From contig NC_135661.1 in assembly GCF_964188315.1 (NCBI RefSeq), positions 15,748,001 through 15,812,000 of the forward strand: a stretch of 64,000 nt of DNA, written 5' to 3'. The notes under the pieces were generated by a model. That model ran no database searches and had not been told where the DNA came from. It was given only the letters and a program-made list of their open reading frames with translations. This stretch comes from Podarcis muralis. Lineage: Eukaryota. Numbering within the stretch: position 1 is the stretch's first letter; every line of letters starts with the position of its first letter. The position numbers were made by a program, and so were the translations under genes. Below are positions 24,381 through 57,585 of the stretch, in pieces.

Positions 24381-24744
24381 AACAAATTCAGTAGGATAGT
24401 GAAGTAATCCAGATTACATAGGTGGCAAATGTGACATGAAGCCTGGCAACCTGAACCCCAGCGTAGCCACTTGCAGATGATCTCGAAGTGCCCGGAGACA
24501 GTCTGGTCGTGCAGCTAACACAGCAGTTTGACTTTGCCAACAAAAATGCATGTTCTTTCCATTTCCACAAGGGGGAACATGCTGGCTTTTACCAGCTTCC
24601 CTCCCAAAGTCCTTTCCACTTAGATCTGCTGGTCACCTTCTGGTCTACTGGTTCCAAGAAGAAAAGTGGTGTGCGTATGAGTGTGAGTGTGTGTGATGTT
24701 GCGAAGGAAAATTCCTAGTTGAGCGTGGAATGGAGATCCCGGGC

Positions 24745-25768
24745 ATGGCAGTGGCAACAGACATCCTGGCGATGGGACTGGGAGGGCTGGGCTTTTTGCT
24801 TCTCGTTCTGGGTGCCGGAGCAGATTGCTGGAGGGTAAGAAACAAATTAAGAGGACTTTAAAGCTGGGAAGGGGGCGGGGGGTGGGGAATCAAAAGCTGT
24901 GTTGTGCCAAATACCTGCCCTTTGGTTTCCTCGGTTGTTTTCCCTTTTTCCTGCCTCATCTGTGGGTAGGGATGCAAAAACCTGTCTGATTTCATTTTCC
25001 GAAGGCAAACTTCAAGTTCCGAAATGAGATGTTAAGTGCAATGTAGCCAACCTTTGCGCTTCTTCAGATTTTGCAGGGCTGTTCTCCTCCACGCAATGTG
25101 TAGATAGCATACACTCAGTGGCGTAGCGTGGGGGGTGCAGGAGGGCCGGCCGCACCGGGCGCAACATCTGGGGGGGGGCGCGCTCGCACTCGCAGCTCTC
25201 TGTCCCTACCTGGCTCACTCACTCTCTCTCACTGCAGTGCTGGCTGTGCGAATCCGAGCCGAGCCGCCGGGTCGCCGCCCACTGTGGAGGGGGGGTGTGC
25301 CAGGCGTGCGGTGCGGGTTAGGGGGCGCAAATCCACGGGTTAGGGGGCGCAAATTACTTGCCTTGCCCCAGGTGCTGACAACCCACGCTACGCCACTGCA
25401 TACACTGGATCGCAACCTGTAGAAGTCCCAAGCACTGACAATGTGCAATTAAAAATTAAAACAATACTGAACCATATAATAAAATTGTACTATTTGTAAT
25501 GACACAGAACTTGCATGTATGCTGAAATGCACTTGCATGTATGTCATTGGTGACACCCAACAGGATCTGATATCCTCTCATTAGTTTGGAGGAATGCTCC
25601 CTGGCTTAGGTGGGGATAAGTAATAAAAAGAGAACAGGAATAATGAGGGAAGTATTTGTAGTGGAGGGTAAGGAAGCCTAACAAAGTTCTGGTTTCCCCC
25701 ATGGTGATTACTTAGAAGCTTTTTATTTTTTTGGAAATCTCAAATGTTAAATTACTTCCCAAAAGAAA

Positions 25769-25815
<47 letters not shown>

Positions 25816-26358
25816 ACCCCTGCTTTGCTGGTACCTGAAACGCGCTTAATCAGTCCATTGGGCAATCTAGCACTGTGTGCTACAAGACGAAGACACAAAG
25901 TCCTTCTGGGAAATTCTTCAACTTGGATCAGCTTCTGAGCCATTCCCTCATCCCAGCATACAAAAAATTTCTTGGTCCCCCTTTCCCTCTCTGAAGAAAT
26001 TGAAAACTTGCTTGATAGAAGAACTGGGGGGTGCTTGGCTTGTGCTGTTGTCAAACCCAAGGCCTGGTTGCCATAGGAACGTTAAGCTCTGGGGAAAATA
26101 TACAGCAGCGGCGAGGGCCGGTGTACTCCTGGAAAGGTCAAACCTGCTTCTGGTGACTTTGATAAAGAGGGGCCAGTGCCCCCAGCTTTGCCCTCACTGG
26201 GTAAACACTGGCCACGGGAGCCATCACCGCTTCTTCCTTTCTTCGTTGCTGAACCCTCTCCGGGTGTTGGATGCACAGGAGCCTGCTCTGTCAAACATAT
26301 TTACTAATATTCATAAAAGTGAGCTGCCTGTGTGTGTGAAAGATACATACATACAGGC

Positions 26359-26401
<43 letters not shown>

Positions 26402-27093: not shown

Positions 27094-27140
<47 letters not shown>

Positions 27141-30100
27141 ATGGGAAACCTGTAAGCAGGACCTGCACACAAGAGCCCTCTCCCCCTCCTGTGGTTTCCA
27201 GACACTGGTATTCAGAAGCATTGCTGCCTCTGACCGTGGTGGCAGAATGCAGCCACCACGGATAGCAGCCATTGATCATCTTCTCCTCCAGGAGGTTCTC
27301 CAGTCCTCTTTGAAAGCTATCCAAGTATGGCGGCCACCACTGCCTCCTGCAGGAGCGAGTTCCACAGATTACGCACTGTGTGAAGAAGTTATTCTCAACT
27401 GTCCTGGTCTGTGGACCAGCTGAATGGGGTTCATGAACAGCCCGTGGTCTGCAGGCCACTGCTTAAGAACCTCTAATTAAAAAATTAGTTCTCAAAGTCT
27501 CTCTCCACCCAACTTCTGATGATTCCACCCTGCTCACCTTCCTTCTTTCTTACAACGAGTCCAGAGTGTAGTCCTGGGTGTCTTCATCTTCCTCCTTAGT
27601 CTCAGAGTTGAACTTGGGGGATGCGGGGGATGGGGACAAAACTAGAATGAGTTAGCTCTGCCTGCCATGCCCTCTGGCGCCACCTACTGTTGGCCTCCCT
27701 GCCTTCTGTCCTACCAGACTTCATGGGCACCAGCCTCTACTGACTACAATTCCCACCACCCCAGTTCATTAGCCATGCTTGGGGCTGAAGGGTGCTTCAG
27801 GGAGTCCAACCACATCTGGAGAGCCTCAGGTTCTTTCCATCCTCGAATAGGGGACAGATTCCCTCCTGCCACAATCCTGAGGCTCCAACCAATTGGAGGG
27901 GCAGGCAGCCTGGGTACAACTGAGTTAGTCCACCAACACCTTTCTACTCAACTCCATCTCACTTCACCTCACCTGTCTGTACAAAAATCCCGGCGGTGCC
28001 TCATAACTGCACAGAACATTTCTTCTCTCTTCTCTTCTCTAGCAAGATGCCAAGGACCCCCTGTCTTCGGTAGGGCTGAGTGCCCGGTGCCGGGGGTTGT
28101 GGAGTGAGTGTGTGTTTGATAACGTCGCTGACCTCTGGACCTGTGACATCCCGATCTCCTATCTCAGCGAGCATCCAGGTGAGGAAAATAAACCAGGTCC
28201 ACCTAGTTGGAGCAGGTTGCAAAGGTGGACAGGACACATGGGAAGCTGCCCTGTACCATTAGTCCATCTAGCTCAATAATACCAGCACTGGCTGGCACTG
28301 GTTCTCCAAAGTTTCAGACAGCAGTTTCCCCCCAGCCTCACCTGGAGTTTTTCGGGGATTGAACCTGGGATCAGAGGCTCCCAGTCAAAGGTGCAGTTCT
28401 AAGACTCTCAGCTCAGTTATTGCCAGTGGGTTTATTCCATAAGTCACAACAATGGCCAAACAGTGGTCAGGTTACAAGGTGTGTAGGTCACCAGTCTCCA
28501 GGCGGAAATTGCTAAATGTCCTGGAAAATCCAGCCATATGGCAACCCATGTTGGGAGTGAAGTTTCCCACGTTGGGCAAAAGATTCCTACATTGCAGGGG
28601 GTTGGACTAGATGGTCCTAGTGGTCTCTTCCAACTCAACAGTTCTATTATTCTAACCCAGAGGAGGTTTTTGAGAGAAGGGGGAGAGATTTTGTTGTTGT
28701 TGCTGCCATTATTAAATAAGTGAGCATCAGAAACCCCACAGGAAAATTTGCCTGCAGTCTACCATTAAACTCTGATCTCCTTTCAAGGTGCCTTCCGTGT
28801 TCTAAAGTCTTGTTCTCTCTCAATTCTTCACCCCATCCCACCAGCTGTTCTCGTGGTCACTCGGGTCTTGGTGATCCTCTCTGCCTTTCTGACTCTTTCT
28901 GCCATACCTCCCTTCATTGCTGGCATGAAATGTACCAAGCTAATGCGCAGCAGAGTCCTTCAGAAACAGAAGTTCTCCCTGGCTGCTGGCATCCTGTTCC
29001 TCTTAGGAGGTAAGCACAGCCTTGCTTTGTTTCAGGTTGGGGCAGAATAGTACTTGATCTAGACCTTGGCTTCCACAGTCTCGTTTGTAGGGTGCCTCCT
29101 TCCTCTTCCTTTTTACATTAGTCCTGCATTAAAGCCTTTAACAGCAACCAAAAAACCGAGGAACCCTCCAGATTCCCTTTTATTCCACATTCATGATGAT
29201 TTGTGCTCACAATGGTATTGGGGTGGTTAAACTTGATCCCGCATTTATGACTGTCTGCACTTGCAACTTTTTACAGTCTGAACAGCTGTAGTGGCGAAGC
29301 AGTACAGATTGTTCATGTTCAAAATAAGTAAATGTAAGTTGAAAGAGAGTAATATGTGGAAGTATAGGGTTGTCTCCAACTAAGACCTACTCGGAGCAGA
29401 TCCAGGGCTGGGTTTAGGTTTGATGAGGCCCTAAGCTACTGAAGGTAATGGGGCCCTTTATATGTCCAGCTGTCCTTTGTCAACAACAAATTGTCACTGT
29501 TTTTTGTGTTGAATATATGCTATATGGTAGTTTAAAGGTAAAGGTACCCCTGCCCGTACGGGCCAGTCTTGTCAGACTCTAGGGTTGTGCGCTCATCTCA
29601 CTCTAGAGGCCGGGAGCCAGCGCTGTCCGCAGACACTTCCGGGTCACGTGGCGAACCTACTCTGGTGAGCCAGAGCCGCACACGGAAATGCTGTTTACCT
29701 TCCCGCTAGTAAGCGGTCCCTATTTATCTACTTGCACCCGGGGGTGCTTTCGAACTGCTAGGTTGGCAGGCGCTGGGACCGAGCAGCGGGAGCGCACCCC
29801 GCCGCGGGGATTCGAACCGCCGACCATGCGATCGGCAAGCCCTAGGCGCTGAGGTTTTACCCACAGCGCCACCCGCGTCCCATATATGGTAGTTTATGGA
29901 CCTTTAAATTTTTGGGGGGCCCCAAGAGAGTGGGGCCCTAAGCTACAGCTTGTTTAGCTTATACGTAAATCTGGCACTGAGCAGACCCATTTAACTAAGC
30001 TGGTCATGCCCGTTATTCAGAGTAGGACAGAGTAGGATGATGTATTATTATTATTAAGGAAGCCACGGCAGCTGGAAACTCTAATGTGGAATGGTCTCCC

Positions 30101-31788
30101 TTTCACAGGGCTCTCTGGAGCGGTTGCTTCTCTGTGGTACGGCATCGACACCGTTCAGAAGTATAAGCTTGAGGTAAGTGAGGTACCCTAAAAGAACATA
30201 TGAACAGAAGAATCATAGAACTGTAGAGTTGGAAGGGACCACACGAGGGTCGTCTAGTCCAACCCCCTGCATTGCCAGAAACTTCTGCCCTACATGGGGC
30301 TCAAACCAACCATTCTGAGGTTAAGAGTCTTAAGCTCTACTGACTGAGCTATATGGCAGAAGCTGCCTCATGCCAAAGTCTGCTAGCCCAGTACTGTTGA
30401 CACAGACAGGCACCAGCTCTCTAGGAAGGGAGTCTTTCCCAGCCCAGTTTGGCGATGGCTAGGGACCTTCCTGCATGCAAAGTAGGGGCTCCACCACACA
30501 GTTGTGGCCATTCCCCAATGGGAATGGAGTTTAGTACAGAACCTATTGAAAGCCACATGGATTCTTTAGGGCGTTCCCCATCCACCTCCTGCCTTGACTG
30601 GCTGCAGTTCCCTAGGGTCTCAGCCCTTTCCCAGAAGTAGCTGAGATGTCAGGATTTGAACCTGGGGCTTTCTGTCCGCAAAGCCCTACAAGTGAGAATT
30701 TTTTTTATGGTAATCAACACATGCCTTTAAAATGTGCTGCTCCCACCTGGTTCGATGCCTGCAGAGTGTCCGGGATCACTCACCATCTCTTTTTTTGTAG
30801 TATTTTTGCTTTTCCATTTTCAAAATTTAAACATAATCTTATTATCCACATTGTTTTTTGCTCTTCTGAGCCAAATCAACTTCTCCCCCTCCTGCCTCAT
30901 GGCTTTGAAAGTTCACCCTTATATCATAGCATTCATACATCTTCCATTTTACGTATTTCTCATTCAACTTATCTCCACTTTCAAATAAATAAAAAAGGTA
31001 ATAACCATTATCATTACAAGATTTCTTACAACCCTACTAGTGTTGGTAAATGTTTACAATAATCCTTCAAATATTGTACAAATTTACTCCAGCCTTTTAG
31101 GAAAGCTTGATCACGCTGGTTTCAGATTTTCCCGGTCAGCTTTGCCAATTCCGCATAGTCCATCATTTTCATCTACCACTCTTCAATCGTTGGTACAGTG
31201 GTACCTTGGGTTACATATCCTTCAGGTTACAGACTCCGCTAACCCAGAAACAGTACCTCGGGTTAAGAACTTTGCTTCAGGATGAGAACAGAAATCATGC
31301 TCCGGCGGCGCGGCAGCAGCAGGAGGCCCCATTAGCTAAAGTGGTGCTTCAGGTTAAGAACAGTTTCAGGTTAAGAACGGACCTCCGGAACGAATTAAGT
31401 ACTTAACCAGAGGTACCACTGTACTTCTTGTTGCTTCCATTTTTGGGCTAAAAGAGTCCTTGCTGCAGTAGTAGCATACATGAACAATTTATGATCGCCC
31501 TTTGGTATTTCTTCACCTACTATACCTAATAAAAATGCTTCCAGGTTTTTTTTTTAAGAAAAGGGATCGCTCACCATCTCAGTTCTCTTTCAGGTCAGCT
31601 TGGGCATCCCTGGCGTGACTTACGAGCTTGGCTATTCCTATTGGATGGCTGCCGCGGGCGCCGCTTGCTCCACTTCCGGCGGTGCCTTACTGATCGCCGC
31701 CGACTGCCTCGATGCCCAGGCGCCGAAGAGAAAGCAGAACCTTCTCTGCAGCCCACTGACCTCCAAAGGGCCACAAACCTACCTATGA
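24745..31788 (+). CDS. Divergent claudin-16-like protein (gene A), complete, 216 aa (221 aa from in-frame ATG at 24730)
   Basis: Exons 24745-24834 (90 nt), 28043-28178 (136), 28845-29009 (165), 30109-30173 (65), 31594-31788 (195); total 651 nt, GT-AG, open frame. Protein: MAVATDILAMGLGGLGFLLLVLGAGADCWRQDAKDPLSSVGLSARCRGLWSECVFDNVADLWTCDIPISYLSEHPAVLVVTRVLVILSAFLTLSAIPPFIAGMKCTKLMRSRVLQKQKFSLAAGILFLLGGLSGAVASLWYGIDTVQKYKLEVSLGIPGVTYELGYSYWMAAAGAACSTSGGALLIAADCLDAQAPKRKQNLLCSPLTSKGPQTYL. Claudin W-GLW-C-C signature and four hydrophobic segments; DCW, CRGLW and EHP motifs as in CLDN16. Confidence 0.88.
25116..25398. mobile_element. hAT MITE (family H2)
   Basis: TIR cagtggcgtagcgtggg...cccacgctacgccactg; perfect 8-bp TSD catacact. 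Confidence 0.88.
25772..25813. repeat. (GT)n microsatellite
   Basis: Direct reading; also (CA)n at 45721-45761 and (GACA)n at 26357-26400. Confidence 0.95.
26545..27138 (+). mobile_element. L2 LINE 3' fragment
   Basis: ORF2 C-terminus (RTLRS...[21 protein letters not shown]...FRRACKTELFRLAF), 3' UTR and (TTA)n tail; related inverted copy at about 37860-38390. Confidence 0.8.
29403..29979. mobile_element. hAT MITE (family H1, inverted, internally deleted) with nested Sauria SINE
   Basis: TIR cagggctgggttta...taaatctggcactg; TSD agcagatc/agcagacc. Confidence 0.8.
29535..29881 (-). mobile_element. Sauria SINE (variant subfamily)
   Basis: 14-bp TSD tatatggtagttta at 29521-29534 and 29883-29896. 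Confidence 0.88.
31196..31421. mobile_element. Tigger-like MITE, main family
   Basis: TIRs and TA TSD; last intron of gene A. Confidence 0.9.
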
Positions 31789-33527: not shown

Positions 33528-36500
33528 TCACACGCGGGAAGCCATGGCATACATTTTGCAAGTGACTATGGGCGAATGGTGTGTCAGGCGCTGAGGTCTC
33601 CTGCGGGGGGCAGCACCTGCATTGGAAAGAAGAATGGAAGTCACAATATTTAGAAATAGATGTGGCCCTCTCTAGTGCTCTTGGAGAGTGGTGCATACAC
33701 AGTGGCGTATCGTGGGTTGCCTCTGCCCCCCTCTGCAAGGAAAGTATTGCCCCCCTTAGAAAATTATTGCGCCCCCTAAGTGGCATTTCCATATGGTGCT
33801 GATGTTGCTACTGGACGGAGCTTCAGCGCAGCGGCGGGACATGTGCGTGCACCTCCTTGGGCTGGGGCACCACCATCGTGGCAAGTCTCACCGTCTGCCC
33901 GCCTCCTCTGCTGGTGGGGAGCGCTGCACAGCCAAAGGATGCAAGGGCCCATCCTCTCCCAGCTCCTGTTTGGAGTGCTGTCCAGGTGAGGCAGGCAAAA
34001 GGTTGGGGCAAAAGCTGCAGAGGTACGCTTGTAAGAATTTTTGCACTTGGAGCAATTGCCCCGGTAGCCCCACCACCATGCTACACCACTGTGCATACAT
34101 TATCTTGTAACAGCCCTGCTAGGTTATCTTCACCCATGCGGGGGAAGCACCATGAGCAGGGTTTCCTGACATCACCTCCAAATTGTCACTGTTGGGTGGG
34201 AGGAATTCAGCTAGGGCCCATCATCCCTAGGCAGCATGGCTAGTAGCTAGTAGGGTGGTTGGAACCTGTAGCCCAAGAATATCTGGAGAATGTAAGAACA
34301 TGAGAGCCCTGAGGAATCAGGCCAAAGGCCCATCTAGTCCAGCATCCTGTGGCCAACCAGATGCCCATTAGGGGAAGCCCCCAAGCAGGATCTGAGCATG
34401 ACAGCAACCCTCCCCGCTTGTGGTTCCCGGCAATTGGTATTCCAAAGCATAATGTCTCCAACAATGGAGGCAGAACATAGTGATAACTGGCTAGTAGCCA
34501 TCGATAGGCTCCCTGAATTTGTCTAGTCCTTCTGTAAAGGTATCCGAGTTGGTGGCTCTCACTACCTCTTAGTATAGTGAGTTCCATAATTTAACCATGA
34601 ATTGTGTGAAGAAGTGCTTTTCTCTACCCTGAGTCCTCCTACGTTTGGTTTTCTTGGATAGCCCCAGGTCCTAGCATTATAGGGAGGCACAAGTTTCCTA
34701 CCCCTCCCTTAGGACAATTGGGGGATATCCACAGCCAGTGATAACCACTACGGTTTTTCCTCTTACACCACCTTTGCTGCTGTCTCTGAACTCTTAACTC
34801 TTCGTACTGACCTCCTGCGGTGGCAGAAAGGCAGCAAGTCAACACAATGGCTGCCACGAAGCATCCTGAGGATCCCACCATTCCCAGCCAGCAAGACCAT
34901 CCAAAGTCATAATGGACTCCCAAGAACACACTGTGCAAGACAAGAGTGGTCCTCTCCATATAGATATCGACAGCATACCAGACAGAGCCCACCAGTCCGA
35001 GGACACCTGGTGGGCCAAGAAAACACAATTATCTTAAGAAAGGCAGAGGCCATATGCTGGGCCACTACCCAAATCCCTCTGTATATGTTCATATATGTGG
35101 CAAAATTGCTCCATATCAACTGGCCAGGGGTTGCATACCATTTTGGGCCAGTGGGCATATTTGGGCTAGTCACAAAATGGCTTCCCTGAGGTGTGCAGCA
35201 TAACACAAAATGGCTGCTGGCTGTAGGCGTAGGGGCATAACACAAAATGGCTTCCATTGTGAGTCATGGCACAACACAGGCTGGCTGTCTTATCTAAAGG
35301 AGCAGAAAAGGAGACCTGGATGGGAAACAGTGTGGTCCTGCCCTGGAATCAGGGGCAACACATCCCGTTGTGTAATGATGAGGGATGAGAGAGGTTGTAC
35401 ATGAGACTCCACTTTCCACCTCAAGGCTTGCCTCAGTAGCTGTCCTGGTCGATAACAACAAAGCCAGACCCCAATGGAAAAGGCACTTACTTCCGACTCC
35501 CAGGACTAATCCTGACGAATAGCGCATCTTCAGCTTAACGTGCGGCTCGTCCTTGAGAAACTTGATGCAGTCGAGGCCCAGCGCCAGCAAGACTAACGCG
35601 AATCCCGAGAGGATGTCAGCTGTGATCAGCAATGCTCGAGTCACCACAATCTTCACTGAGAAGGGAGAGCAAAATACAAGGTAGTTGAAGGTCAGTCAGA
35701 GAAGCATCCTACTGGCCTGGCGTCCCCTGTCTGACTCTGTTGGGAGGAACCATGAAGGTCTGTATAATACTGAGCCAGGTGATTTGTCCACCTAGACCAT
35801 CAATGTCTACACCAGTGGGCAGTAGCTCTCCAGGATTTCTCTCAGCAGTCCCTCCCATTTCTCTACCCGGATTAAAATGGGACCTTCTGCATGCATATCA
35901 GGAGCTATAACCACTGAGTTAGATCCCTTTCCTAAAATTAAAGCAAGGTGCCAGATAAAGAGTTGATTTAAATAGAAACATAAGAAGCTAACATACTGAG
36001 TCACTGGTGCATCCAGCTCATGATTGATGATTGTCTACACTGACTGGAAGCAGCTATACAGGAGTTCAGGCAGGGGTCTCTCCTAGGATACTTGGAGATG
36101 CCAGGGATTGAACCAGCAACCTTCTGCATGCAGAGCAGATGTTTTACCACTAAGCTATGGCTCTTCCCCCCGGTTCTTCCCTGCTCAAGCTGGCACCTGA
36201 CCTGTCTTCTGATGACCTCTCTGCCTCTGCCTCTTCCTCTATCTCCTGCTTCCTTATTTACCTAATCTGGTGCCTCTGACCTCCGGCCCATCCAAGATTG
36301 TGCCTCCTGCCCCTGCCCCATTTTGCAGACCAGACCCTTCAAGAGTCACCATTTTCCAGGAACGGTTCCAGTTTACAGAAGCCGTCCCGGTTTCTGATTA
36401 GATCCCGGAATGTCCCACTTTTCCTTAGGAAGTCTCTACAGTGGTACCTCGGGTTAAGAACTTAATTCGTTCTGGAGGTCCGTTCTTAACCTGAAACTGT

Positions 36501-37860
36501 GCTTAACCTGAGATACCACTTTAGCTAATGGGGCCTCCAGTTGCTGCCACACCGCGGCCACGCGATTTCTGTTCTTATCCTGAAGCAAGGTTCTTAACCC
36601 GAGGTACTATTTCTGGGTTAGCGGAGTCTGTAACCTGAAGCGTCTGTAACCTGAAGCATCTGTAACCCGAGGTACCACTGTATTTTCATCGGATAAATGT
36701 TGGCGGGTCTGGAGTTACATAACCCCTGAGCCAAGGAGATAAGTACTGTAACTGTACAACTTTTAGAAGACATCTGTATAGGGAAGTTTAAAAAAAAACT
36801 TTTAATGTTTTATTATGTTTTTATATATGTTGGGAAGCCGCCCAGAGTGGCTGGGGCAACCCACTCAAATGGGCAGGGTATAAATAATAAAATTGTTGTT
36901 GTTGTTGTTGTTATATAGGACATCCCTATTGTTATTGGAGAAATGTTGGAGGGTATGATTTTGGCTGAAGCCTGTTCCAGGCTAGCACTACCCCCATCCA
37001 ACTCTAAAAATGTAGGGCAGTGTTATTACCCCTATACTGCCGAAAAACAAGCTGAGGCTGAGAGAGATACAGCTTGCCAAAGAGTATTTGCATTGCCACA
37101 GATCACGGGCCCATTATTATCATCACTATAGGCCACTGGTGGAGAACTGTACTGGGGCTCCCGATTTGACCCATGAGGTCATGCCTTGTGCAGTGCAAGC
37201 CCCAATGACCAGACAACGGCTGGGGCCTCAGTGCGCAGCTCTATTTAAAGAAAAGCTCCCCTGATGTCATTGTGATGTCAGATGATTGACAGGTCAAACT
37301 TGGCCCATGGAAGGGGGCAGGAGATAGAGATTTGGCCCACCAGTTCCGAATCCAGTTCTCCACCTACTGATGTAAGCCTATCCAACCTTACTTTAAAGAG
37401 GACTCTCCACTGGTCAACCCTCATCTCTGCATTTTTACTCCACCCCTGGAGGCCTGATCATCAGTTCCAGCCCTTTTAGCAATCTTAACACGCTCGGAAA
37501 CCCACCCCAGCACCTCCAACAATTGGGGCCAACTGTAGAAGGGGAGGGTCGCAATTGTGCAATGGCTGAGAAAGCTTGAATGCACCCGAAGATGCTTCAG
37601 CCCATCAGCTGTTGGAGACTTACAGGGATGCTCTGCTAAAATGGAGTCGTACTGGTCGCAGGTCCTGATGCCGTCTTGCATGTTGGTGACACACTCCCTC
37701 CACAGTCCTCGGCATTTGTGGCTGACCTGCAAAGAACATCATCGGATGTTTTGGGTGCAAAAAGGGGTGCTGCTTGGGGCTGAGACAAATAGAGAAAGGG
37801 ACCTCCACATTTCCAGGCTTTCGCTGTACCTTTAAGCTTACTGTTTTATCTCATTGGTTT

Positions 37861-37913
<53 letters not shown>

Positions 37914-43341: not shown

Positions 43342-43343
<2 letters not shown>

Positions 43344-45719: not shown

Positions 45720-45764
<45 letters not shown>

Positions 45765-48549: not shown

Positions 48550-48583
48550 TTACACGGACTGATCTCCCCTTTTTACAGGGGGC
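48550..48583 (-). CDS. CLDN19: Candidate alternative terminal exon 5 of CLDN19 (C-terminus ...ARE-PPVKRGDQSV)
   Basis: Internal donor GA|gtacgt at 48949/48948; long polypyrimidine tract plus tttttcag acceptor at 48584-48585; phase-compatible G CCC CCT GTA AAA AGG GGA GAT CAG TCC GTG TAA. Confidence 0.7.
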
Positions 48584-48938: not shown

Positions 48939-51900
48939 TCAGACGTACTCTCTAGCCGTGGAAGGCTGCGACTGCCGGTAGTACTGCTGCCCTCTCTCTT
49001 CCGGTTTGGGGCAGGAGCAGGACAGGAAGGCTCCGCCCAGCATGGTCAGGCTGCCTGCTGACCACCCCACAAAGAGAGCAGGTCCAAATTCATACCTAAG
49101 GCCAAAAAAGAAAAAGAAAAAGAGTGTAGATTATAACAGCAGACATGTCGAGGTGTGCATCCTGATAAATCGGCTCCACCTCTTTGTGGGGACGTGTTGC
49201 GGGCGAGCCGCCAAGCCTCCCCCCCTACAGGGAACCAGGCAGAGGGCCTTCTCGGAAGTGGCACCCGCCCTGTGGAACGCCCTCCCACCAGATGTCAAAG
49301 AGAAAAACAACTACCAGACTTTTAGAAGACATCTGAAGGGAAGATTTTCATGTTTAATAGGTTATTGTATTTTAGTGCTCTGTTGGAAGCCGCCCAGAGT
49401 GGCTGGGGAAACCCAGCCAGATGGGTGGGGTATAAATAATAATAATACTTATTAATTATTATGGGGGGCGGGACTGTGTCCTGCCTTACGCTGGGGAGGC
49501 CCGGCCACGCCAGTTAGCCAAGTGGCCAATCAGGCAGGTTAGGGGGCGTGGTCAGGGTCAATTTAAACCACAGTGCAATGCTGAATCGCCCCTTTTCAGG
49601 CTCACGCCGTGAATCTCTTGCCCTCCCACTCTTTGTTCAGGTTGCATCATTGATCTTGCCATGGTCTTCGGTTGGCCGCCGTTGAGGGGCCTGGTAGCAC
49701 TTTTTCCACTTGGCAAATTGGCACTGGCAACTTGGTTTCCGCCTACCTCATAGCAATCGTCACAACTTTGTAAGGTTAGGCGGTTAGGCACTGGAATAGC
49801 AATGTGTGGGGGAGGGGAGGTGCGGCCATCACCTGCCCCCTCCGTGCTCAAGGGTATTCCGTTAAAGCATGGGTAGGCAAACTAAGGCCTGGGGGCTGGA
49901 TCCGGTCCAACTGCCTTCTAAATCCCGGACAGTCTGAGAATCAGCGTGTTTTTACATTTGTAGAATGTGTCCCTTTATTTAAAATGCATCTCTGGGTTAT
50001 TTGTGGGGCCTGCCTGGTGTTTTTACATGAGTAGAATATGTGCTTTTATTTAAAATGCATCTCTGGGTTATTTGTGGGGCATAGGAATTTGTTGATTATT
50101 TTTTTTCAAAATATAGTCCGGCTCCCCACAAGGTCTGAGGGACAGTGGACCGGCCGCCTGCTGAAAAAAGTTTGCTGACCCCTGTGTTAAAGGAATCTAG
50201 GGGTGTGGATTTCGTCTGAAGCCCGGGGAGGGGCTAGGGCCATGCCACAACCCCAGTGAGAACCCAGGGGATGCTCGGGTCAATCCACATTGGCGGGGCT
50301 CCCTCTACTGGTGGTTTACCCTTAAAAATCTCCCTGCAAGGCGGGCAGGAGTCAGATACAGTCTGTTGATGCCAATGCCTAAGCCAATACCTCTCACATT
50401 CTGTAATCAATAATGTTGTAGCCTAAATTTTTGCCCATTAACATTAACCTAAATTCTGTGTCCTTGTGTCTTTATTCTCCTTGGGGTAGCTTGGGGCTTC
50501 GACATGCAAACTCAGTTGCCTCAAGATGGCAAAAAATAAAGGGCCACAGTGGAGTGGCAGAAGAACAGAACACCTGCTTTGCATGCAGGAGGTGCTGGGA
50601 TCATTCCTTGGCACCCCCAGGTAGGGCTAGGCAACTACCCTAGTCTGGAACCCTGGAGAGCTACTGCCAGTCTCTGTAGGCAATACTGAGCTACATGGTG
50701 TGACAATCAGCTTCCTGTTTCAGGAATTTATGGGAGGGATTGAAGTGCATATCAGAACTTGTGTTTGCACCATTATAGTGGGTTAACGTGCTGCGTTGCT
50801 CTGGTGCATTGAATCAGAGGTGATTTCCAATGAGATCTCAGACAGCGAGGACATGGTGCCGGCCCCATAGAAATGGGTTTGTGAGTGTGTATCGAAATTA
50901 GCCTGGTGTGCAAAGGTAACGGTCTCTACGGTCTCCCACAGCTGGCGTGTGGCCCCTCAGAAGGTTGCCCAGAAGGCAAAGTGGCCCTTGGACTGAAAAA
51001 CGTTCCCCACCTGTGATCGAGGGGGGATGCTGTACACAACTGGGACAATCTCTCTGGGTTTTGAAAGGCACACATCCGCTGCTGTGATTTCTGGTTTGAA
51101 AAGAGGTGTAAGAAAGCGCACTCTGGGTTGGCACAGGCCCTGCTCTCACCTGGCGTTAACCGGCGTGCTGGGGTTGAAAAACTCGTACGTCACCCGTGCC
51201 GCGTACCATGAAACAGCCGTCATGGTGCACAGACCTGGGAACAGAGGAGACAACACAAATGATCCAGTTAATAGGAATTGGGGGCCAAACGACACATTAC
51301 ACTCATGTTCCAGGATTGGGAGTTATCATGAGAACATTCTGCTGAATCAAACGAGGGACCCACCTAGTGCAGCATTCTCTCAGCTTTCTGGGATGTTCTA
51401 ATGTTGTGAGAGAGGGAGAAAAGCTTTTCTCTGTCTGCTTTCTCCATGGCATGCATGGGGGGGGGGGCGCGGAGGAGAAATACAAGCAAGCCCAGGAACC
51501 CGTTCTTAAAAGTAGTAAATGAACAGCTTGAATGGAAAATGTTTGAGGGGAGGAGCAGCCAAACAGAGATGGTCTTTTAGCAGAGCCAATGAGAATGGGC
51601 CCTGCAGTCCTATATGTCCTATGGCTGCTGCTGTCTTGTGTCACATGTCTCCAATTCCCCCAATATTCAGTGGTCGATGTACTTCATAAGGCTTATCTGC
51701 AGGCACAGGCCCAAGGAGAAACTGCTATGTTGCCTGACCTACTGCCCTTACTAAACCTCGGAGCAAGCTGATATATCTAGCTTTTTCCTTTACTATCTTG
51801 AACACATGCTTGTGTTCCCCAAATTTAAACACAAGTATAACAAGAACCTTGATATGCATTTCATGCTCCAAACCAGGATGTGCCCAGAACAGTTGCACCC

Positions 51901-54900
51901 GATAACCCTCTTGTTGAGGAATAATCCACCTTGTTAACTTGTTTCCACAAAGTTGTATTTGTTCTGAGCCGCTTCGAGTCTACCGAATAAAGCAAGGGTG
52001 GAGTGTATTTTTCAACCTTCTCTTCTGGGCAACCTTCTGGGGGCTACGTGCCAGTGGTGGGCAGCAGGCCAGAAGCAAAAGTGGGTGGAGCAATAAATAT
52101 CACTCTCGTCTTACTGTATAATGGCAATGGAAGACTGTCGTCAGGCTGCAGTTCCCTTGGCCACCAAGAGGTGTCACTGTCCACTTCAGTGTAGTGAGTG
52201 GTGGCAGATGGGCAGCCTAGGGAATCCGTGGGGTGACAGCAAGGGCACTCTGCAGCAGCCACCCAGCTCCACTGGCTCCCCCACCTGCCGGCTTCAAGGG
52301 CCTTGCCCTCAGGATTCAGATAACCAGGCTGACCACTGGACTGCTGGTCACCTACCCCCTCTGCATCCCGCCTTGGAATCTGTTGCTATTGATTGACAGG
52401 AAGAATGACAGGAAGAGCAGACCAGAGAGGTGGAAGATGCCCAGAAGCATAGTCTGGCCTTGAATACTGCAGGAGCAGCAGCATGGAGAAGGCACTCAGC
52501 AGTGGCAGCCAACCAGCCTCCAGATCTGCAGCACAATCCAGTTTCCACGTGTTGTCATACACACATGTCTGTCCTCCATCCAGGGATTCTCAGAGTTTGA
52601 GGACACAACCATGCCAGGCAATAACACCCAAAGAGAGTACAAATAGAGCAGGCAAAGGACCAGGGAGAGTCCTCAGGTCAGAGGAAGATGCCCAGAGGGC
52701 CACATCTGGCACCCAGGCTGGGACAAGGCCCACGGGGTATATATTAGCCTTCAGCTTACTTACCTGCTAGTAGGAAGAAGACACCCCCCAACACAGCGAT
52801 CCAGCTTTTCACCACGGGATTCTCGTCTCCAACTTTGGTGCATTTCATTCCGATCACGCTGACAACAGCCCCGACGAAACCCAGGAGGATGGAGACCACC
52901 ATAAGTGCCCGGGAAGTCTGGATATGAACTGGAAAACAAGAAAGTGCCTGTCTTTGGGGTGTCCAAGGGGGGAAAGAGGCAGCTGCAATTGCAGGGTTAA
53001 GTTGCTTAAAATGGCCCTTAGGGTTGCCATATGTTGAAGAGCAAAAAAGAGGTCACATTTGCTGACTTCTACTTTTAACTATGGATCACTACACAGTGGG
53101 TGGCGCTGCAGTCTAAACCACTGAGCCTCTTGGGCTTGCTGATCGGAAGGTTGGCAGTTTGAATCCCCGCGACCAAGTGAACTCACGTGGCTCTGTCCCT
53201 GCTCCTGCCAACCTAGCAGTTTGAAAGCACACCAGTGCAAGTAGATAAATAGGTACCGCTCCGGCGGGAAGGTAAATGGCATTTCTGTGTGCTCTGGCTT
53301 CCGTCACAGTGTTCAGTTGTGCCAGAAGCGGTTTAGTCATGTTGGCCACATGACCCGGAAAGCTGTCTGGCCTGAAAGAGAGATGAGCACCGCACTCCAC
53401 TGTCGCCTTTGACTGGACTTAACCTTCCAGGGATTCTTTACCTTTTTACCTCTACCCATGAAATAGAGGATGTGACCTGGAAAAAGAGGACATATGGCAA
53501 CACTTCCAGGAACTAATTTTTAACAAAGGCAGTTTATTTTATTATTTTATTATTTATTTCCAATTAAGAGTGCTGTCAGGGGTTCAGGAGCAGAGGCAAG
53601 GGCAAGGGAGGAAACAGAGAGCGAAGGGGAGGAGGCAGAAGAAAGGATGAGTGATGACGACGACCCGAGATCTCCGAGTCTCTCCAGTGAGTCGGAGGAT
53701 TCACAGAAAGGAGCACCAGTGGCCAAGGCAAGGGGGGAGTTTAGGGGGGCACCCCAGGGAGATAGAGCCAGAGGGGAATCAGAGGAGAGCAGTTGGAGAT
53801 CGGGTCCAGCGTCACCGCCAGAGAGCAGGGAAGAGGAAAGGAGCCAGGGGGCAAGCGCTGGCAGCTCACAGCAGGAGGGAGGGCACGAGTCAGGGGTGGC
53901 CACACCTCCATCTGGGAGCGAAGAAACGGTTAGACGGAAGGTGGAAGGTTGGGCGCGCGCGCCAAGTTCAAATGCACAGGAAGGAGGCGCAGTAGGCAGC
54001 CCGGAAAGAGAGCCGGGTCCTAAAGCCCGGCGCAAGGAGACAGGAGAGTCCGGGGGGTCAGCGTCCGAAGAATCCCGGAAGGAAGAGACCCAGGGGGGCA
54101 GAGGGACCCAGAGAAGAACAGTCAGGCGGAAAAGGTGGAGCAGGGCTAGGATATTAAGTTGGTGTACGAGGGGCGGAGATTCAGACGGAGCTTCGCCGAT
54201 CTAGCTACTAGACGTAGGGTTGCACGCAGCAGCTTGAGAATGGAAACTGTAACTCAATAAAGACTTTTACTTAATGACCGTTGGCTGGCGTGATCCTCTG
54301 TGAGCTAGGATCCTGAAGCAACCCTGACAAGTGCCATGTTCCAACCTCTGACGTATGGGCAAAGGGCTCCCTTACCTGTTAAAGGCCTCTTTGACACATT
54401 GGCTAAAGGCTCTTTACAGCTTTACCCAATGACTCTCGCCCATTGACATATAGGCAAAGGGCTCCTTTAACAGTTATATGCAACACTTATGAAAAAGCTC
54501 TGACACAGAGGCAAAGAGCTATTTAACCTGGGCTCTACACCTTGAATCAGATCCACTGGCACACAGGCCAAAGGCTCCATCAGCTCTGAAAGGGGTCTCT
54601 GAGGCAGAGGCTAACAGACTCTCACAAACTGACACATGGGCGCCATTTTGAATCCATCTGTCAGGCCCAAACTCTGCCAATTTGGATGCCTCTGAAGATT
54701 TCCTAATTCCAGTTTGGTGTGATGGGCTCCCGATAGCAAGGAATGGGCTTTGGTCTCTGTTTCTTAGATTCCTGGGGCAACACCGTGTGTACTGCCAGCT
54801 AGCTAGCTAGCTAAATAAATAAATAAATAATAGTTAATTCTCAGCAAGCAGTTGCACCCATGCAAGAATGTCACACACGCACAGTTACTGTTTTAGATCT

Positions 54901-56839
54901 TTGCTCTGTTAGGGGTTGCTTTGCCCATGCAAAGCACTTAAAGAAGAGAGCTGGTAGCAGAGGGATCTGTTGAAGAATCAGCGTCCCTACCGACTGGTAG
55001 CTTTCCCCCTCCGGGGGGTCTTCCACAATCAAATTGCATTAGTCAAAGCTGGCCCATCCATGAGGCGAAGCGAGGTGGTTGCCTAAAGGCAGCAGGCTCC
55101 AGACAGCCACAAGGAGTGGCAGATCCAGCTGCCAGGGACTGTCAGGCTCCTTTTCCACTGCATGCCCACCTGGCAGGCTGGCACACAACAGCGGGCACAC
55201 AGCAGCGGAGAAAGCATTTTCCACTTTAGCAGCAAAACGTCCCGGCCTGGCCCTGGCATTAATGTTGGGTTTATTCTGGAAAGTCCATACACCACTCCTC
55301 TTTACAGTGGTACCTCGGGTTACATACGCTTTAGGTTACAGACGCTTCAGGTTACGGACTCCGCTAACCCAGAAATAGTACCTCGGGATAAGAACTTTGT
55401 TTCAGGATGAGAACAGAAATCGCACGGCTGCAGTGGAAGGCCCCATTAGCTAAAGTGGTGCTTCAGGTTAAGAACAGTTTCAGGTTAAGAACGGACCTCT
55501 GGAACGAATTAAGTACTTAAGCCAAGGTACCACTGTATTGGTTTTTTTCTTCAATGCATATTCAACATTACCGCATGGAGGGGTGCTCTTGCAGAGCAAT
55601 GACAGTGGGACTCACCCTCCCACCCTGGATATTGAATACTGAAAAATAATAATTATCAATAGTAATAGTTTGTATCCAATTAGTCCCACTCAAGAGTAAA
55701 CCAGCTGAAGTTAGTAGACATGGCTAAATTAGGTTCATTACAGCATTGGCCCGAATATAAGCCTCACTTTCCCCCCAAATTCCGACTGTGAAAAGTCAAA
55801 GTGTGGCTTATATTCGCGACCTTACGGTATGCATCCAGGAGCAGCGAGGAATGGAGCAGCTTATATTTGGGTATTTCCCCTTTTTTTTCTTTTCCCCTCT
55901 CCAATTTTAACAGTGTGGCTTATATTTGGGTGCGGCTTATATTCGGGCCAATATGGTAATTACAATGGGTCAGCGAGTAGCACTTACTTGCAGGCAGCCC
56001 CCAAATAATAAACAGCCACCACTGTCACCCCGAGGCTTCCTTTGAGGCAAGGTTCACCAGGGGTCACTTCCAGCACCTTTACACGATGCCAAGGCTCAAG
56101 GTGGATAGGAAATAGCACTAAATATTAAACAATAATAAATATCACCTTGAGCCTTCCCTTGAGACGAGGCTCACCAGAGGTCACTCGCAATGCCTTTATA
56201 TGATGCCAAGGTTCAGCTTGGATATGAAAGAATATGAAAGCTATTACTGAAATAAAAATAAAACAGAGGAGGAGGAGGAGGCGGTGAGGAGGAGATATCA
56301 ACTGTGTGGCATTTTCACATTAACAAGAACACAAGGAGCCCCGACAATTATGGACTGGCATACCAAGCTACAAGAATTTGCTGAAATGGCACAGCTGACC
56401 AATAGCCTGAGAGGCAACTCAAAACAAAAATTTATGGAAAAGCGGGATAGATATAAGATATATGTTCAAAAATACAGTAAAGGTTCACTATCTATGCAAG
56501 CATTCGATTGACGTTGGGTAGAGACTGAGTTGAGAAACAAGACCAAGGGTACATATTGATATAGGAATGTATTAGATAAAATGTAAAGAAATATACAATA
56601 ATAAGAGTACATTCTTTCATTAAAAAAAGGAATATACAACAGGATAGACAGCAAGTCCAAAGTGTTGGTATATATATGATTTTGGAGTAAGTTTGGAATA
56701 GCTTTTTATTTTGGTTTTTTTTCTTTTTCTTTTTTCTTTCTGTATATAAAGTATACATACAGGTTGAAAATTACAGTATAACAAGTTTTGTGATGGAATA
56801 TGACAATGTCTGTTGATGTAACGTAAGAACGAACTAACG

Positions 56840-56881
<42 letters not shown>

Positions 56882-57585
56882 AAGCAAGAACACAGGTCTC
56901 TGCCCCTAAAAATGTACAATCCAAAATTCAATGCACTGGAGACAGTCGAAGGCAATGGGGGGGGGGGCGCTTTTCTTTTCTATTTTAGGACAAGAGAGAA
57001 GCAGAGCTCTCAGCCGCCGCCACTGCGTAGCTAAAACCTTCGCTAACGGGGCCTCCCGCTGCCGTTGCACAATTTCTGTTCTCATCCTGAAGCAAAGTTC
57101 TTAACCCCAGGTACTATTTCTGGGATAGCGGAGTATGTACCCTGAAGCGTCTGTCACCCGAGGTACCACTGTACTTGATTTAGAGGTGGTACCTCGGGTT
57201 ACAGACGCTTGGAGGCTGCGCTACATCCCGTCAGGCGAGAGCCCCGCTTCCCGTACCCACCCGCAGGCTGCCTGTTGGACGCCAGCGAGGCGCAACCGCA
57301 GCCCCGGCTCTCCCTGTGCGCCCACCTCCCCCCCCCCCACCCCATGCACCCTTGGGACGCACCGTCGAGCGAGAGCAACGACTCGTGGAGCTTGCACTGG
57401 ACCTGCCCGGTGCTCTGCGAGGCGCAGCTCATCCAGAGGCCCTCGTACAGCCCGACGGCCGTGATGATGGCGTCCCCGGCGTAGGAGCTCTGCTTCCATT
57501 GGGGCAGCGCCGACGAGCAGATGGAGCCCACCAAGCCGCCCAGGGCCATGAAGTAGCCCACCAGCTGCAGCCCCGCGCTGGCCAT
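48939..57585 (-). CDS. CLDN19: Claudin-19, complete, 209 aa (AREYV isoform)
   Basis: Exons 57585-57363 (223 nt), 52928-52764 (165), 51234-51150 (85), 49095-48939 (157); total 630 nt. The sequence [59 protein letters not shown] and STAREYV is diagnostic for CLDN19 rather than CLDN1 or CLDN7. Confidence 0.93.
49146..50504 (+). mobile_element. Probable solo LTR-like element interrupted by an L2 tail (49225-49460) and a hAT MITE
   Basis: Inverted termini tgtcga...tcgaca; internal GC boxes, CCAAT, atttaaa and a degenerate caataatgttgtagcc polyA region; no conventional TSD. Confidence 0.55.
49868..50184. mobile_element. hAT (Charlie-like) MITE
   Basis: TIR catgggtaggcaaac...gtttgctgacccctg; TSD cgttaaag/tgttaaag; internal direct duplication. 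Confidence 0.75.
53097..53450 (+). mobile_element. Sauria SINE, diverged
   Basis: Recognisable head, body and tttacc tail. Confidence 0.85.
53574..54329 (+). mobile_element. Solo LTR (Gypsy-like), 756 bp, antisense in CLDN19 intron 1
   Basis: Inverted termini tgtcagg...cctgaca; perfect 5-bp TSD AGTGC (53569-53573, 54330-54334); AATAAA near 54256. Confidence 0.9.
54349..54644 (+). repeat. Degenerate 20-bp motif repeated 5-7 times with non-identical spacers
   Basis: Consensus TGACAYAKRGGCWAAGGGCT at 54349, 54392, 54444, 54501 and 54557; weaker copies at 54600 and 54630. Confidence 0.7.
55305..55535. mobile_element. Tigger-like MITE, main family
   Basis: TIRs and TA TSD. Confidence 0.9.
55739..55958. 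mobile_element. Tc1/pogo-type MITE (family 5)
   Basis: Inverted ends attggcccgaatataagcc...ggcttatattcgggccaat. Confidence 0.65.
56030..56265. repeat. Diverged tandem duplication, period about 117 bp
   Basis: gaggcttcctttgaggcaaggttcaccaggggtcac... versus gagccttcccttgagacgaggctcaccagaggtcac... Confidence 0.7.
56300..56630 (+). mobile_element. L1-type 3' fragment
   Basis: [31 protein letters not shown], the same family as the 2777-3406 insertion. Confidence 0.7.
57030..57209. mobile_element. Partial Tigger-like MITE plus an adjacent inverted TIR fragment
   Basis: Right half of the MITE ends at 57171; second TIR fragment at 57186-57209. Confidence 0.75.

What the first reader, a model, noticed from the sequence alone, without database searches (positions are those of the whole stretch)
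24730..57585. Compact CLDN16-like x2 + CLDN19 cluster: a candidate second claudin-16/19 paracellular cation system not known from mammals
Seen: three intact multi-exon claudins within 33 kb, namely gene A (+), gene B (-) and CLDN19 (-), all sharing the 165-nt TM2-TM3 exon. Established: mammalian CLDN16 and CLDN19 co-assemble in thick ascending limb tight junctions to allow paracellular Mg2+/Ca2+ reabsorption, and mutations in either cause FHHNC. Human CLDN16 lies beside CLDN1 (3q28), and CLDN1, CLDN7 and CLDN19 are close paralogues with the same 223/165/85-nt exons. Inference: an ancestral [CLDN1/7/19]+[CLDN16] pair was duplicated in vertebrate whole-genome duplication; squamates kept CLDN16-type genes beside CLDN19 while mammals lost them. 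That would place a partner gene and CLDN19 under possible shared cis-regulation. Non-avian reptiles lack a loop of Henle, so the tissue is open (distal nephron, oviduct calcium transport, gut, Schwann cells or RPE). Caveats: human CLDN1/CLDN16 are divergently oriented whereas here the CLDN16-like genes lie 3' of CLDN19, and automated annotation may already label them claudin-16-like.
Basis: partly seen in the sequence, partly recalled or inferred. Interest (0 to 1): 0.9.

Follow-up and report, generated by a model that had tools for sequence, protein, structure and literature searches.

The report
Ancient CLDN19 plus two claudin-16-like genes
This wall-lizard locus holds CLDN19 next to two intact claudin-16-type genes, a three-gene cluster that goes back to the ancestor of jawed vertebrates and that mammals lost, so the "claudin-16" of reptiles, birds and frogs is an old sister copy of the mammalian gene, not its direct counterpart.

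Summary
The window holds three intact claudin genes with canonical splice sites: gene A (+, 5 exons, 221 aa), gene B (-, 5 exons, 221 aa) and CLDN19 (-, 4 exons, 209 aa). Each has a 165-nt TM2-TM3 exon. A and B are identical to NCBI's "claudin-16-like [Podarcis muralis]" proteins, so both are already annotated.

The cluster is not a squamate novelty. CLDN19-B-A occurs in the same layout in Podarcis raffonei, a gecko and the chimaera Callorhinchus. CLDN19-B occurs in ostrich (followed by a YBX1-like gene) and in eel.

Trees and AU tests split claudin-16 into two ancient lineages:
- Type I: mammals, salamanders, caecilians, coelacanth and elasmobranchs.
- Type II (gene B): sauropsids, frogs, ray-finned fishes and chimaera.

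No species was seen with both types. B keeps the five acidic pore residues and the S/T-R-V tail, so it is probably the lizard's only classical claudin-16 and the partner of CLDN19, not a second system.

Gene A belongs to a further ancient lineage, sister to a "C-type" gene 3.7 Mb away in P. raffonei. Neither lineage was found in birds or mammals, and neither has a known function.

Spliced RNA was seen for A in this species, and for B only in a related species. Co-expression was not tested. Interest is moderate.

The parts
24730..24834 (+). Gene A exon 1 (ATG, TM1, start of ECL1)
   Evidence: donor AGG|gtaaga. The product is identical to XP_028596842.2.
28043..28178 (+). Gene A exon 2 (ECL1 with the CRGLW..C..TCD..EHP motif)
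   Evidence: An RNA contig of run X1 joins it to exon 3.
28845..29009 (+). Gene A exon 3, 165 nt (TM2, loop, TM3)
30109..30173 (+). Gene A exon 4, 65 nt (first half of ECL2). This short exon is shared with the C-type genes and is absent from gene B.
   Evidence: The same short exon is in the Callorhinchus A-type gene and in C-type genes.
31594..31788 (+). Gene A exon 5 (rest of ECL2, TM4, tail ending TYL, stop)
   Evidence: A 346-nt contig of run X1 covers the exon and its 3' UTR.
39504..39617 (-). Gene B exon 1 (ATG, TM1, [14 protein letters not shown])
   Evidence: There is an in-frame stop upstream of the ATG.
37624..37726 (-). Gene B exon 2 (ECL1, CRGLW..EHP)
   Evidence: A contig of run X10 joins exons 4-3-2.
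35491..35655 (-). Gene B exon 3, 165 nt (TM2, loop, TM3)
34812..35006 (-). Gene B exon 4, 195 nt (ECL2 and TM4 in a single exon, as in CLDN16)
33528..33616 (-). Gene B exon 5 (cytoplasmic tail ending KMYAMASRV, stop)
57363..57585 (-). CLDN19 exon 1, 223 nt
52764..52928 (-). CLDN19 exon 2, 165 nt
51150..51234 (-). CLDN19 exon 3, 85 nt
48939..49095 (-). CLDN19 exon 4 (TM4, tail ending REYV, stop)
   Evidence: It is 100% identical to the last exon of the upstream claudin in the P. raffonei locus L001.

Best explanation
The window is the Podarcis muralis copy of an ancestral jawed-vertebrate gene cluster. Its layout is CLDN19, then a claudin-16-type gene (B) in the same orientation, then a second and more divergent claudin-16-subfamily gene (A) on the opposite strand.

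Gene B belongs to 'type II' claudin-16. This is an ancient sister lineage of mammalian CLDN16 ('type I'). The two lineages have been kept reciprocally:
- Sauropsids, frogs, ray-finned fishes and chimaera keep type II, beside CLDN19.
- Mammals, salamanders, caecilians, coelacanth and elasmobranchs keep type I. In human and mouse it lies beside CLDN1.

B retains the acidic ECL1 residues and the PDZ-binding tail of CLDN16. It most likely does the CLDN16 job in the lizard: it would co-assemble with CLDN19 in distal-nephron tight junctions into a cation-selective paracellular pathway for Mg2+/Ca2+. This step is inferred, not shown.

Gene A is a member of a separate ancient lineage, sister to a C-type lineage found 3.7 Mb away in P. 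raffonei. Both lineages appear to be missing from birds and mammals. A is an intact, spliced claudin under purifying selection, with a net-negative ECL1 and a different tail. Its role is unknown; the most likely one is another channel-type or modulatory tight-junction subunit.
For: Gene models and identity to NCBI proteins.

Family membership: Pfam; full-length sequence matches to solved claudins; the AlphaFold model of A has pTM 0.75 and its best fold match is claudin-15, 4p79, with target-normalised TM-score (TMt) 0.79.

Conserved layout:
- P. raffonei L001, CLDN19-B-A.
- Eublepharis L008, same layout.
- Callorhinchus L003, CLDN19-like, then B-type, then an A-type gene with all five A-type exons.
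- Struthio L002, CLDN19, B, then a 325-aa cold-shock-domain gene.
- Anguilla L007, CLDN19 then B.

Phylogeny (careful IQ-TREE): type II 100/99, gnathostome type I 96/78, I+II 95/91, A 97/97, C 100/99.

AU tests reject amphibian, amniote and chondrichthyan monophyly across types I and II, with p = 2e-114, 1e-39 and 6e-4.

Linkage, judged from contig lengths:
- Type II shares a chromosome with A and/or C in squamates, an alligator, a turtle and a frog.
- Type I lies on a different contig from A and C in Microcaecilia, Ambystoma and Lissotriton.

Of 140 claudin-16 proteins, 33 are type-I-like and 107 type-II-like. No sauropsid, frog or ray-finned fish is in type I.

Residues: B has D104, D105, E119, D126 and E140 (human numbering) and the tail ...SRV.

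Selection: dN/dS against P. raffonei is 0.12 for B and 0.23 for A.

Spliced transcripts.

Literature: Xenopus cldn16 is expressed in the pronephric intermediate tubule and DT1, and cldn19 in the intermediate tubule (PMC2441470).
Against: - I could not search the whole lizard genome, so absence of a type I CLDN16 beside CLDN1 is inferred only from its absence among the retrieved proteins.
- No species with both types was found.
- Synteny of type I with CLDN1 outside mammals could not be read.
- Human CLDN1 and CLDN16 are head-to-head, while CLDN19 and B are in tandem. A block duplication therefore needs an added inversion.
- The lamprey gene is unresolved between the two types.
- Spliced B RNA was seen only in a related species. 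In this species only an unspliced piece was found.
- The tissues of the runs are unknown, and co-expression or interaction with CLDN19 was not tested.
- The Xenopus EST itself was not typed as type II.
Confidence: 0.75

Rival explanations
1. One reading: the lizard has a canonical CLDN16 next to CLDN1, and in addition this CLDN19-linked pair acts as a second, parallel claudin-16/19 system.
For: The whole genome was not searched. The hit list was cut at 120 proteins (232 bits), so a lizard type I protein scoring a little lower would not have been shown.
Against: None of the 33 type-I-like proteins comes from any of the many bird, turtle, crocodilian or squamate genomes represented, although mammalian, amphibian and shark type I proteins scored inside the listed range. 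NCBI names only three claudin-16-like genes (A, B, C) on this Podarcis muralis chromosome. For alligator, ostrich and cormorant, NCBI gives the name 'claudin-16' to the B-type gene itself.
Confidence: 0.1
2. B is the plain orthologue of mammalian CLDN16. There is one gene throughout vertebrates, and it moved from beside CLDN19 to beside CLDN1 in the mammalian line. On this view the two-clade tree is an artefact of rate or composition.
For: No species with both types was found. Sequences are short (about 220 columns). Several type II sequences (Bombina, sturgeon, eel) and the elasmobranch Heptranchias (type I) sit on very short branches, and the lamprey is unresolved. The orientation relative to the classic claudin differs between the two loci.
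Against: Both clades contain cartilaginous and bony vertebrates, and each clade follows the species tree internally. AU tests reject all three species-tree groupings. Type I also occurs in elasmobranchs, coelacanth, salamanders and caecilians, where it lies on a different contig from A and C. Type II is linked to A and C in frogs and sauropsids. A single mammalian translocation does not explain this.
Confidence: 0.1
3. A and B are recent squamate tandem duplicates of one claudin-16 gene.
For: They are adjacent and both encode 221 aa.
Against: A and B are only about 32% identical. A-type genes occur in chimaera, sturgeon, bichir, amphibians, turtles and crocodilians. A has a different intron layout and tail.
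Confidence: 0.01
4. Gene A is a decaying or non-functional copy that merely remains open.
For: RNA depth is low (word depth about 6 in contigs). Two of the five CLDN16 acidic pore residues are replaced, and the TRV tail is missing. ECL1 is modelled with low confidence.
Against: The reading frame is intact, the splice sites are canonical and the transcript is correctly spliced. The lineage is conserved from chimaera to lizard with lineage-specific invariant motifs. dN/dS is 0.23. The claudin fold is predicted.
Confidence: 0.04

Closest known systems
Mammalian CLDN16 (paracellin-1), partner of CLDN19 in the thick ascending limb
   Same: Gene B has the same five-exon layout. This includes the split of ECL1 after ...SLE, the 165-nt exon and a single ECL2-TM4 exon. 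ECL1 is nearly identical ([40 protein letters not shown]). All five acidic residues reported to set cation selectivity are present, and the tail is KMYA..SRV. Identity to mammalian proteins is 56-59%.
   Different: B lies in a separate ancient clade, type II. It sits downstream of CLDN19 instead of head-to-head with CLDN1. It has no long N-terminal extension. Type II signature residues include CDQYD (type I has CDEYD) and HY[DE]FGW (type I has QY.FGW). Function and interaction with CLDN19 are untested.
'CLDN16' or 'claudin-16-like' of chicken, other birds, turtles, crocodilians, frogs, eels, sturgeon and Callorhinchus
   Same: These are the true orthologues of gene B (type II clade 100/99). 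Where the locus could be read, they have the same position beside CLDN19.
   Different: Birds appear to lack the A-type neighbour: ostrich has a cold-shock-domain (YBX1-like) gene there instead. The literature treats the bird and frog genes as orthologues of the mammalian gene (PMC3875640, PMC2441470).
Human CLDN1-CLDN16 gene pair at 3q28 (from established knowledge of the human gene map; not tested here)
   Same: A classic claudin of the CLDN1/7/19 group lies next to a claudin-16-type gene. This fits one ancestral pair copied by an early vertebrate genome duplication.
   Different: The orientation differs: divergent in human, tandem here. The lizard locus also carries a third gene, A.
Unnamed 'claudin-16-like' A-type and C-type genes of non-mammalian vertebrates (NCBI predictions only)
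   Same: Gene A is the P. muralis member of the A-type (identical to XP_028596842.2). A-type and C-type share the short ECL2 exon, the motif E|VSL.IPG..(Y/F)E.GYS.W and a Y-[LV] end.
   Different: I found no experimental or evolutionary description of either type in the searchable literature. The C-type does not even reach Pfam's claudin model.
Solved claudin structures (claudin-15 4p79, claudin-3, claudin-4, claudin-19 3x29)
   Same: The predicted structure of A has four TM helices and an extracellular sheet. Target-normalised TM-score (TMt) is 0.79 to claudin-15. Full-length sequence matches have E-values of 1e-6 to 1e-10.
   Different: Identity is only 20-27%. The ECL1 of A is poorly modelled (pLDDT 45-60). 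No claudin-16 structure has been solved.

Membership tests
Claudin family (Pfam PF00822 PMP22_Claudin) | Profile match above the curated cut-off | tested here: met
   A scores 57.2 bits. B, tested through its P. raffonei orthologue (4 differences in 221 aa), scores 55.7 bits. The cut-off is 26.7.
Claudin family | ECL1 signature W...GLW..C........C | tested here: met
   A has DCW...CRGLWSEC...WTCD. B has DCW...CRGLWREC...RTCD. CLDN19 has PQW...EGLWMSC...VQC.
Claudin family | Four-helix bundle with an extracellular beta-sheet | tested here: met
   The model of A has pTM 0.75. Its top PDB matches are claudin-15, -3, -4, -19 and -9. B was not modelled.
CLDN16 orthologue group of mammals (type I) | Groups inside the clade that holds mammalian CLDN16 | tested here: not met
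   B falls in the type II clade (100/99), outside gnathostome type I (96/78). The AU test rejects an amniote clade, p = 1e-39. A lies outside I+II altogether.
CLDN16 orthologue group of mammals (type I) | Position next to CLDN1 | tested here: not met
   B and A lie 3' of CLDN19 in the window and in L001, L003 and L008. The human position is from established knowledge.
CLDN16-type cation pore (works-like test) | Acidic ECL1 residues D104, D105, E119, D126, E140. The role of these residues is recalled from published mutagenesis and was not re-checked here. | tested here: met
   B has 5 of 5. A has 3 of 5 (K at 104, A at 126) but still carries a net-negative ECL1.
CLDN16-type cation pore (works-like test) | C-terminal class I PDZ motif (T/S)-R-V | tested here: met
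   B ends in SRV. A does not meet this feature: it ends in TYL.
CLDN16-type cation pore (works-like test) | Heteromeric interaction with CLDN19 and cation-selective permeability | not testable with these tools
   This needs co-expression, FRET or co-IP, and dilution potentials.
CLDN19 | 223/165/85-nt exon layout, a YV end and high identity to CLDN19 of other species | tested here: met
   Exons are 223/165/85/157 nt and the tail ends in REYV. Identity is 100% to the P. raffonei last exon and 89% to a 47-residue stretch of ostrich exon 1. Per-exon identity to the claudins upstream of B in chimaera and eel is 65-77%. It was not compared directly with CLDN1 or CLDN7 sequences.

The most novel reading that the evidence does not exclude
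Vertebrates began with a linked claudin module: CLDN19, a claudin-16 gene and an A-type gene, with a C-type gene nearby. On this reading the claudin-16/claudin-19 partnership was born as neighbouring genes. The 'CLDN16' of birds, reptiles, frogs and basal fishes is a different ohnologue from the human disease gene. The uncharacterised A-type and/or C-type claudins are additional paracellular cation-channel subunits that work with CLDN19 in the kidneys, and possibly the oviduct or gut, of non-mammals. That would include teleosts, where no Cldn16 partner for Cldn19 is known (PMC11605958).
Probability: 0.3. Interest if true: 0.65.

Novelty: new member of a known kind. Interest (0 to 1): 0.5.

Why it matters
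[quoted passage not shown] Chicken, Xenopus and fish are used as comparative models for them.

If the non-mammalian "CLDN16" is an ancient sister copy that lies beside CLDN19, then results from chicken and frog are about a paralogue of the human gene. The reciprocal one-copy retention suggests the two copies are functionally interchangeable. The physical linkage to CLDN19 hints at how the obligate pair arose.

The A-type and C-type lineages are two claudin subfamilies without mammalian members and without any described function. They are candidates for the missing partners of Cldn19 in fish and reptile kidneys.

None of this changes the basic biology of claudins, and the genes are already in automatic annotation, so the value is moderate.

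Tried and rejected
- Full-length profile of gene A: aligning A's exon pieces to a full-length guide with MAFFT misplaced exons 1, 4 and 5. Only exons 2 and 3 were used (A2).
- The A2 search listed only claudin-16 proper, not A-type proteins. A-type entry points came from a phmmer search with A exon 2.
- Synteny of type I genes was unreadable. Scyliorhinus and Microcaecilia gave no DNA and no neighbours within 10 kb. Latimeria was not on record. Lampetra had no neighbours.
- The claudin next to the Salarias A-type gene could not be typed from the 4 kb available.
- Seven literature searches found no paper on claudin-16 paralogy or on the 'claudin-16-like' genes. There was one incidental mention in an eel transcriptome paper.
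- RNA: raw-read runs X22 and X20 showed only repeat-derived reads over both genes. B was not seen spliced in this species.
- The tissues of all runs are hidden, so co-expression of A, B and CLDN19 could not be judged.
- Pfam on the flanking open frames and on the open frame in CLDN19 intron 1 gave nothing. The Atlas look-up of the left-flank frame gave only weak leads to major facilitator superfamily (MFS) transporters.
- Rejected readings: recent tandem duplication of A and B, and gene A as a pseudogene (see the rival explanations).

Full report
**What is in the sequence.** The window is vertebrate DNA without gaps. Reading the open frames and splice sites gave three complete claudin genes.

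- Gene A lies on the + strand with five exons: 24730-24834, 28043-28178, 28845-29009, 30109-30173 and 31594-31788. It encodes 221 aa.
- Gene B lies on the - strand with five exons: 39504-39617, 37624-37726, 35491-35655, 34812-35006 and 33528-33616. It also encodes 221 aa.
- CLDN19 lies on the - strand with four exons of 223, 165, 85 and 157 nt: 57363-57585, 52764-52928, 51150-51234 and 48939-49095. It encodes 209 aa ending in YV.

Every intron is GT...AG with a pyrimidine tract.

My models of A and B are identical to NCBI XP_028596842.2 and XP_028597528.1, both named 'claudin-16-like [Podarcis muralis]'. The window is therefore wall-lizard DNA, and the genes are already in automatic annotation.

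Both proteins pass Pfam's claudin model and match solved claudins over their full length. An AlphaFold model of A (pTM 0.75) is most like claudin-15.

**Expression.** In Logan contigs of RNA runs of the same species:
- A 501-nt contig joins A exon 2 to exon 3 exactly at the predicted sites.
- Another contig covers exon 5 plus the 3' UTR.
- Two further runs from other studies hold partial spliced pieces. Depth is low in all of them.

For B, a 1677-nt contig from a related species joins exons 4, 3 and 2 at the predicted sites. In the window's own species only an unspliced intron-exon piece was seen.

Compared with Podarcis raffonei, dN/dS is 0.12 for B and 0.23 for A. The number of differences is small.

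**What B is.** A search with B's largest exon, followed by a profile search, returned about 140 'claudin-16' or 'claudin-16-like' proteins. They come from squamates, birds, turtles, crocodilians, frogs, sturgeon, eels, osteoglossids, chimaera, sharks, lamprey, coelacanth, salamanders, caecilians and mammals.

A careful maximum-likelihood tree splits claudin-16 proper into two groups:
- Type II (support 100/99) holds gene B, all sauropsids, frogs, ray-finned fishes and Callorhinchus.
- Gnathostome type I (support 96/78) holds elasmobranchs, coelacanth, salamanders, caecilians and mammals.
- The lamprey gene is unresolved at the base.

Each group repeats the species tree internally. AU tests reject a single amphibian, amniote or chondrichthyan clade, with p = 2e-114, 1e-39 and 6e-4. 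The caveat is that these groups were named after the tree was seen.

Among the 140 proteins, none of the 33 type-I-like ones is from a sauropsid, frog or ray-finned fish. None of the 107 type-II-like ones is from a mammal, salamander or caecilian. The one elasmobranch scored as type-II-like by identity (Heptranchias) carries the type I motif and falls in type I on the tree.

The two types are therefore ancient paralogues with reciprocal retention. I found no species that keeps both.

**Synteny.** The layout CLDN19 -> B -> (A on the opposite strand) is found in:
- P. raffonei (L001);
- the gecko Eublepharis (L008);
- the chimaera Callorhinchus (L003).

In Callorhinchus the third gene matches A-type proteins over all five A-type exons, with 255 summed bits. 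The same region scores 79 bits against C-type and 95 against type II.

Ostrich has CLDN19, then B, then a 325-aa cold-shock-domain gene, which fits YBX1, the human neighbour of CLDN19. That YBX1 neighbours CLDN19 in human is established knowledge and was not tested here. Eel has CLDN19 followed by B.

Contig lengths give linkage:
- Type II is on the same chromosome as A and/or C in Mixophyes, Eublepharis, Tiliqua, Elgaria, Hemicordylus, Varanus, Alligator and Emydura.
- Type I is on a different contig from A and C in Microcaecilia, Ambystoma and Lissotriton.

Together with the human CLDN1-CLDN16 pair (established knowledge), this fits a block duplication of a [classic claudin + claudin-16] pair early in vertebrate history. 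An inversion is needed to explain the different orientation. That last step is inference.

**What A is.** A phmmer search with A's ECL1 exon, followed by a profile search, found two further lineages, both labelled 'claudin-16-like' by NCBI.

- A-type: squamates, turtles, crocodilians, frogs, salamanders, a caecilian, sturgeon, bichir, bowfin and a few teleosts.
- C-type: squamates, turtles, all three amphibian orders, sturgeon, paddlefish and lungfish.

No bird or mammal protein appeared in either lineage. A and C are each monophyletic (97/97 and 100/99) and are sisters (92/76).

They share a short fourth exon and an intron before VSL.IPG that B and type I lack. The C-type gene lies 3.7 Mb from the cluster in P. 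raffonei and 5.3 Mb from it in the gecko. It is not in this window.

**Function.** B keeps D104, D105, E119, D126 and E140 (human numbering). From memory of published mutagenesis, these are the residues that give CLDN16 its cation preference. B also keeps the KMYA..SRV PDZ tail.

Xenopus cldn16 is expressed in the pronephric intermediate tubule and DT1, the segments equated with the thick ascending limb. Xenopus cldn19 is expressed in the intermediate tubule (PMC2441470). Frogs yielded only type II among claudin-16 proper, so that gene is probably a B orthologue. This is an inference, because the EST was not typed.

I therefore read B as the lizard's working claudin-16 and the partner of the neighbouring CLDN19. 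It is not an extra system.

A differs from B in several ways:
- It has K at position 104 and A at position 126.
- It has a three-residue insertion in ECL1.
- Its ECL1 is still net-negative (about -4 by my count).
- It has a classic-claudin-like GMKCTK loop.
- Its tail ends in TYL.

A's role is open. A channel-type or modulatory subunit is the most likely, with low confidence. A salmonid paper notes that only Cldn19 is known in fish kidney and that its partner is unknown (PMC11605958). A-type genes exist in some teleosts, which makes them candidates. This is speculation.

**Known or new.** The genes are predicted and named in NCBI for dozens of species. Seven full-text searches found no paper that discusses claudin-16 paralogy, the CLDN19 linkage, or the A-type and C-type lineages. 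The chick claudin survey treats chicken Claudin-16 as the mammalian orthologue and does not list a linked pair that includes it (PMC3875640). Subscription-only papers on claudin phylogeny were not searchable.

**Verdict.**
- The duplication-and-loss idea is largely right, but the cluster is far older and wider than squamates.
- 'Two CLDN16-like genes' should read one type II claudin-16 plus one member of a distinct A-type lineage.
- 'Second system' is probably wrong, because sauropsids seem to lack the mammalian type.

Interest is moderate.

Noticed in passing
L009:10001-17192 (P. raffonei, 3.7 Mb from the cluster); L005:10001-20808 (Eublepharis, 5.3 Mb from the cluster): There is a third 'claudin-16-like' gene (C-type, 213 aa, XP_028597770.2 in P. 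muralis) on the same chromosome. It has the same five-exon layout as gene A and ends in TYV. It gets no Pfam claudin hit at E <= 0.01. In both species an 831-833-aa gene follows it.
   Followed up: partly
window:13389-18151 (- strand): Long open frames (297, 143 and 165 aa) look like exons of a multi-pass membrane transporter. From memory they resemble the SLC45 sugar-transporter family. Pfam found nothing, and the Atlas gave only weak leads to major facilitator superfamily (MFS) transporters. This gene, not YBX1, is the left neighbour of gene A in the window.
   Followed up: partly
window:53647-54204 (+), inside CLDN19 intron 1: A 185-aa open frame rich in Ser, Glu and Arg lies in the most G+C-rich part of the window (0.53). 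It has no Pfam match and I did not look at RNA there.
   Followed up: no
window:28179-28844 compared with L001:21268-21380: Intron 2 of gene A is 666 nt here but 113 nt in P. raffonei. The extra DNA coincides with a repeat that has very high RNA-contig depth (28400-28800), so it is probably a recent transposable-element insertion.
   Followed up: partly
window:29400-29999, 31200-31599, 36360-36960, 38160-38360, 38760-38960: Interspersed repeats in the introns of A and B carry word depths of 1e3 to 3e5 in every RNA run, with many variant letters. These are abundant repeat-derived transcripts and say nothing about expression of the claudin genes.
   Followed up: no
L004 (Lampetra fluviatilis claudin-16, P0050): The lamprey gene is equally similar to type I and type II (73% to each) and carries the type II motif CDQYD. 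Its place relative to the I/II split is unresolved, so the timing of the duplication relative to the lamprey lineage is open.
   Followed up: partly
L002:12130-17964 (Struthio): In ostrich the 5.8 kb between the B-type gene and the cold-shock-domain gene has no called gene and no TBLASTN match to gene A. Together with the lack of bird A-type and C-type proteins, this suggests birds lost both lineages.
   Followed up: partly
window:34607-34892: A 287-nt contig in RNA run X1 runs straight from B's intron 4 into exon 4. This is either unspliced pre-mRNA or DNA carry-over. It is the only trace of B in runs of the window's own species.
   Followed up: no
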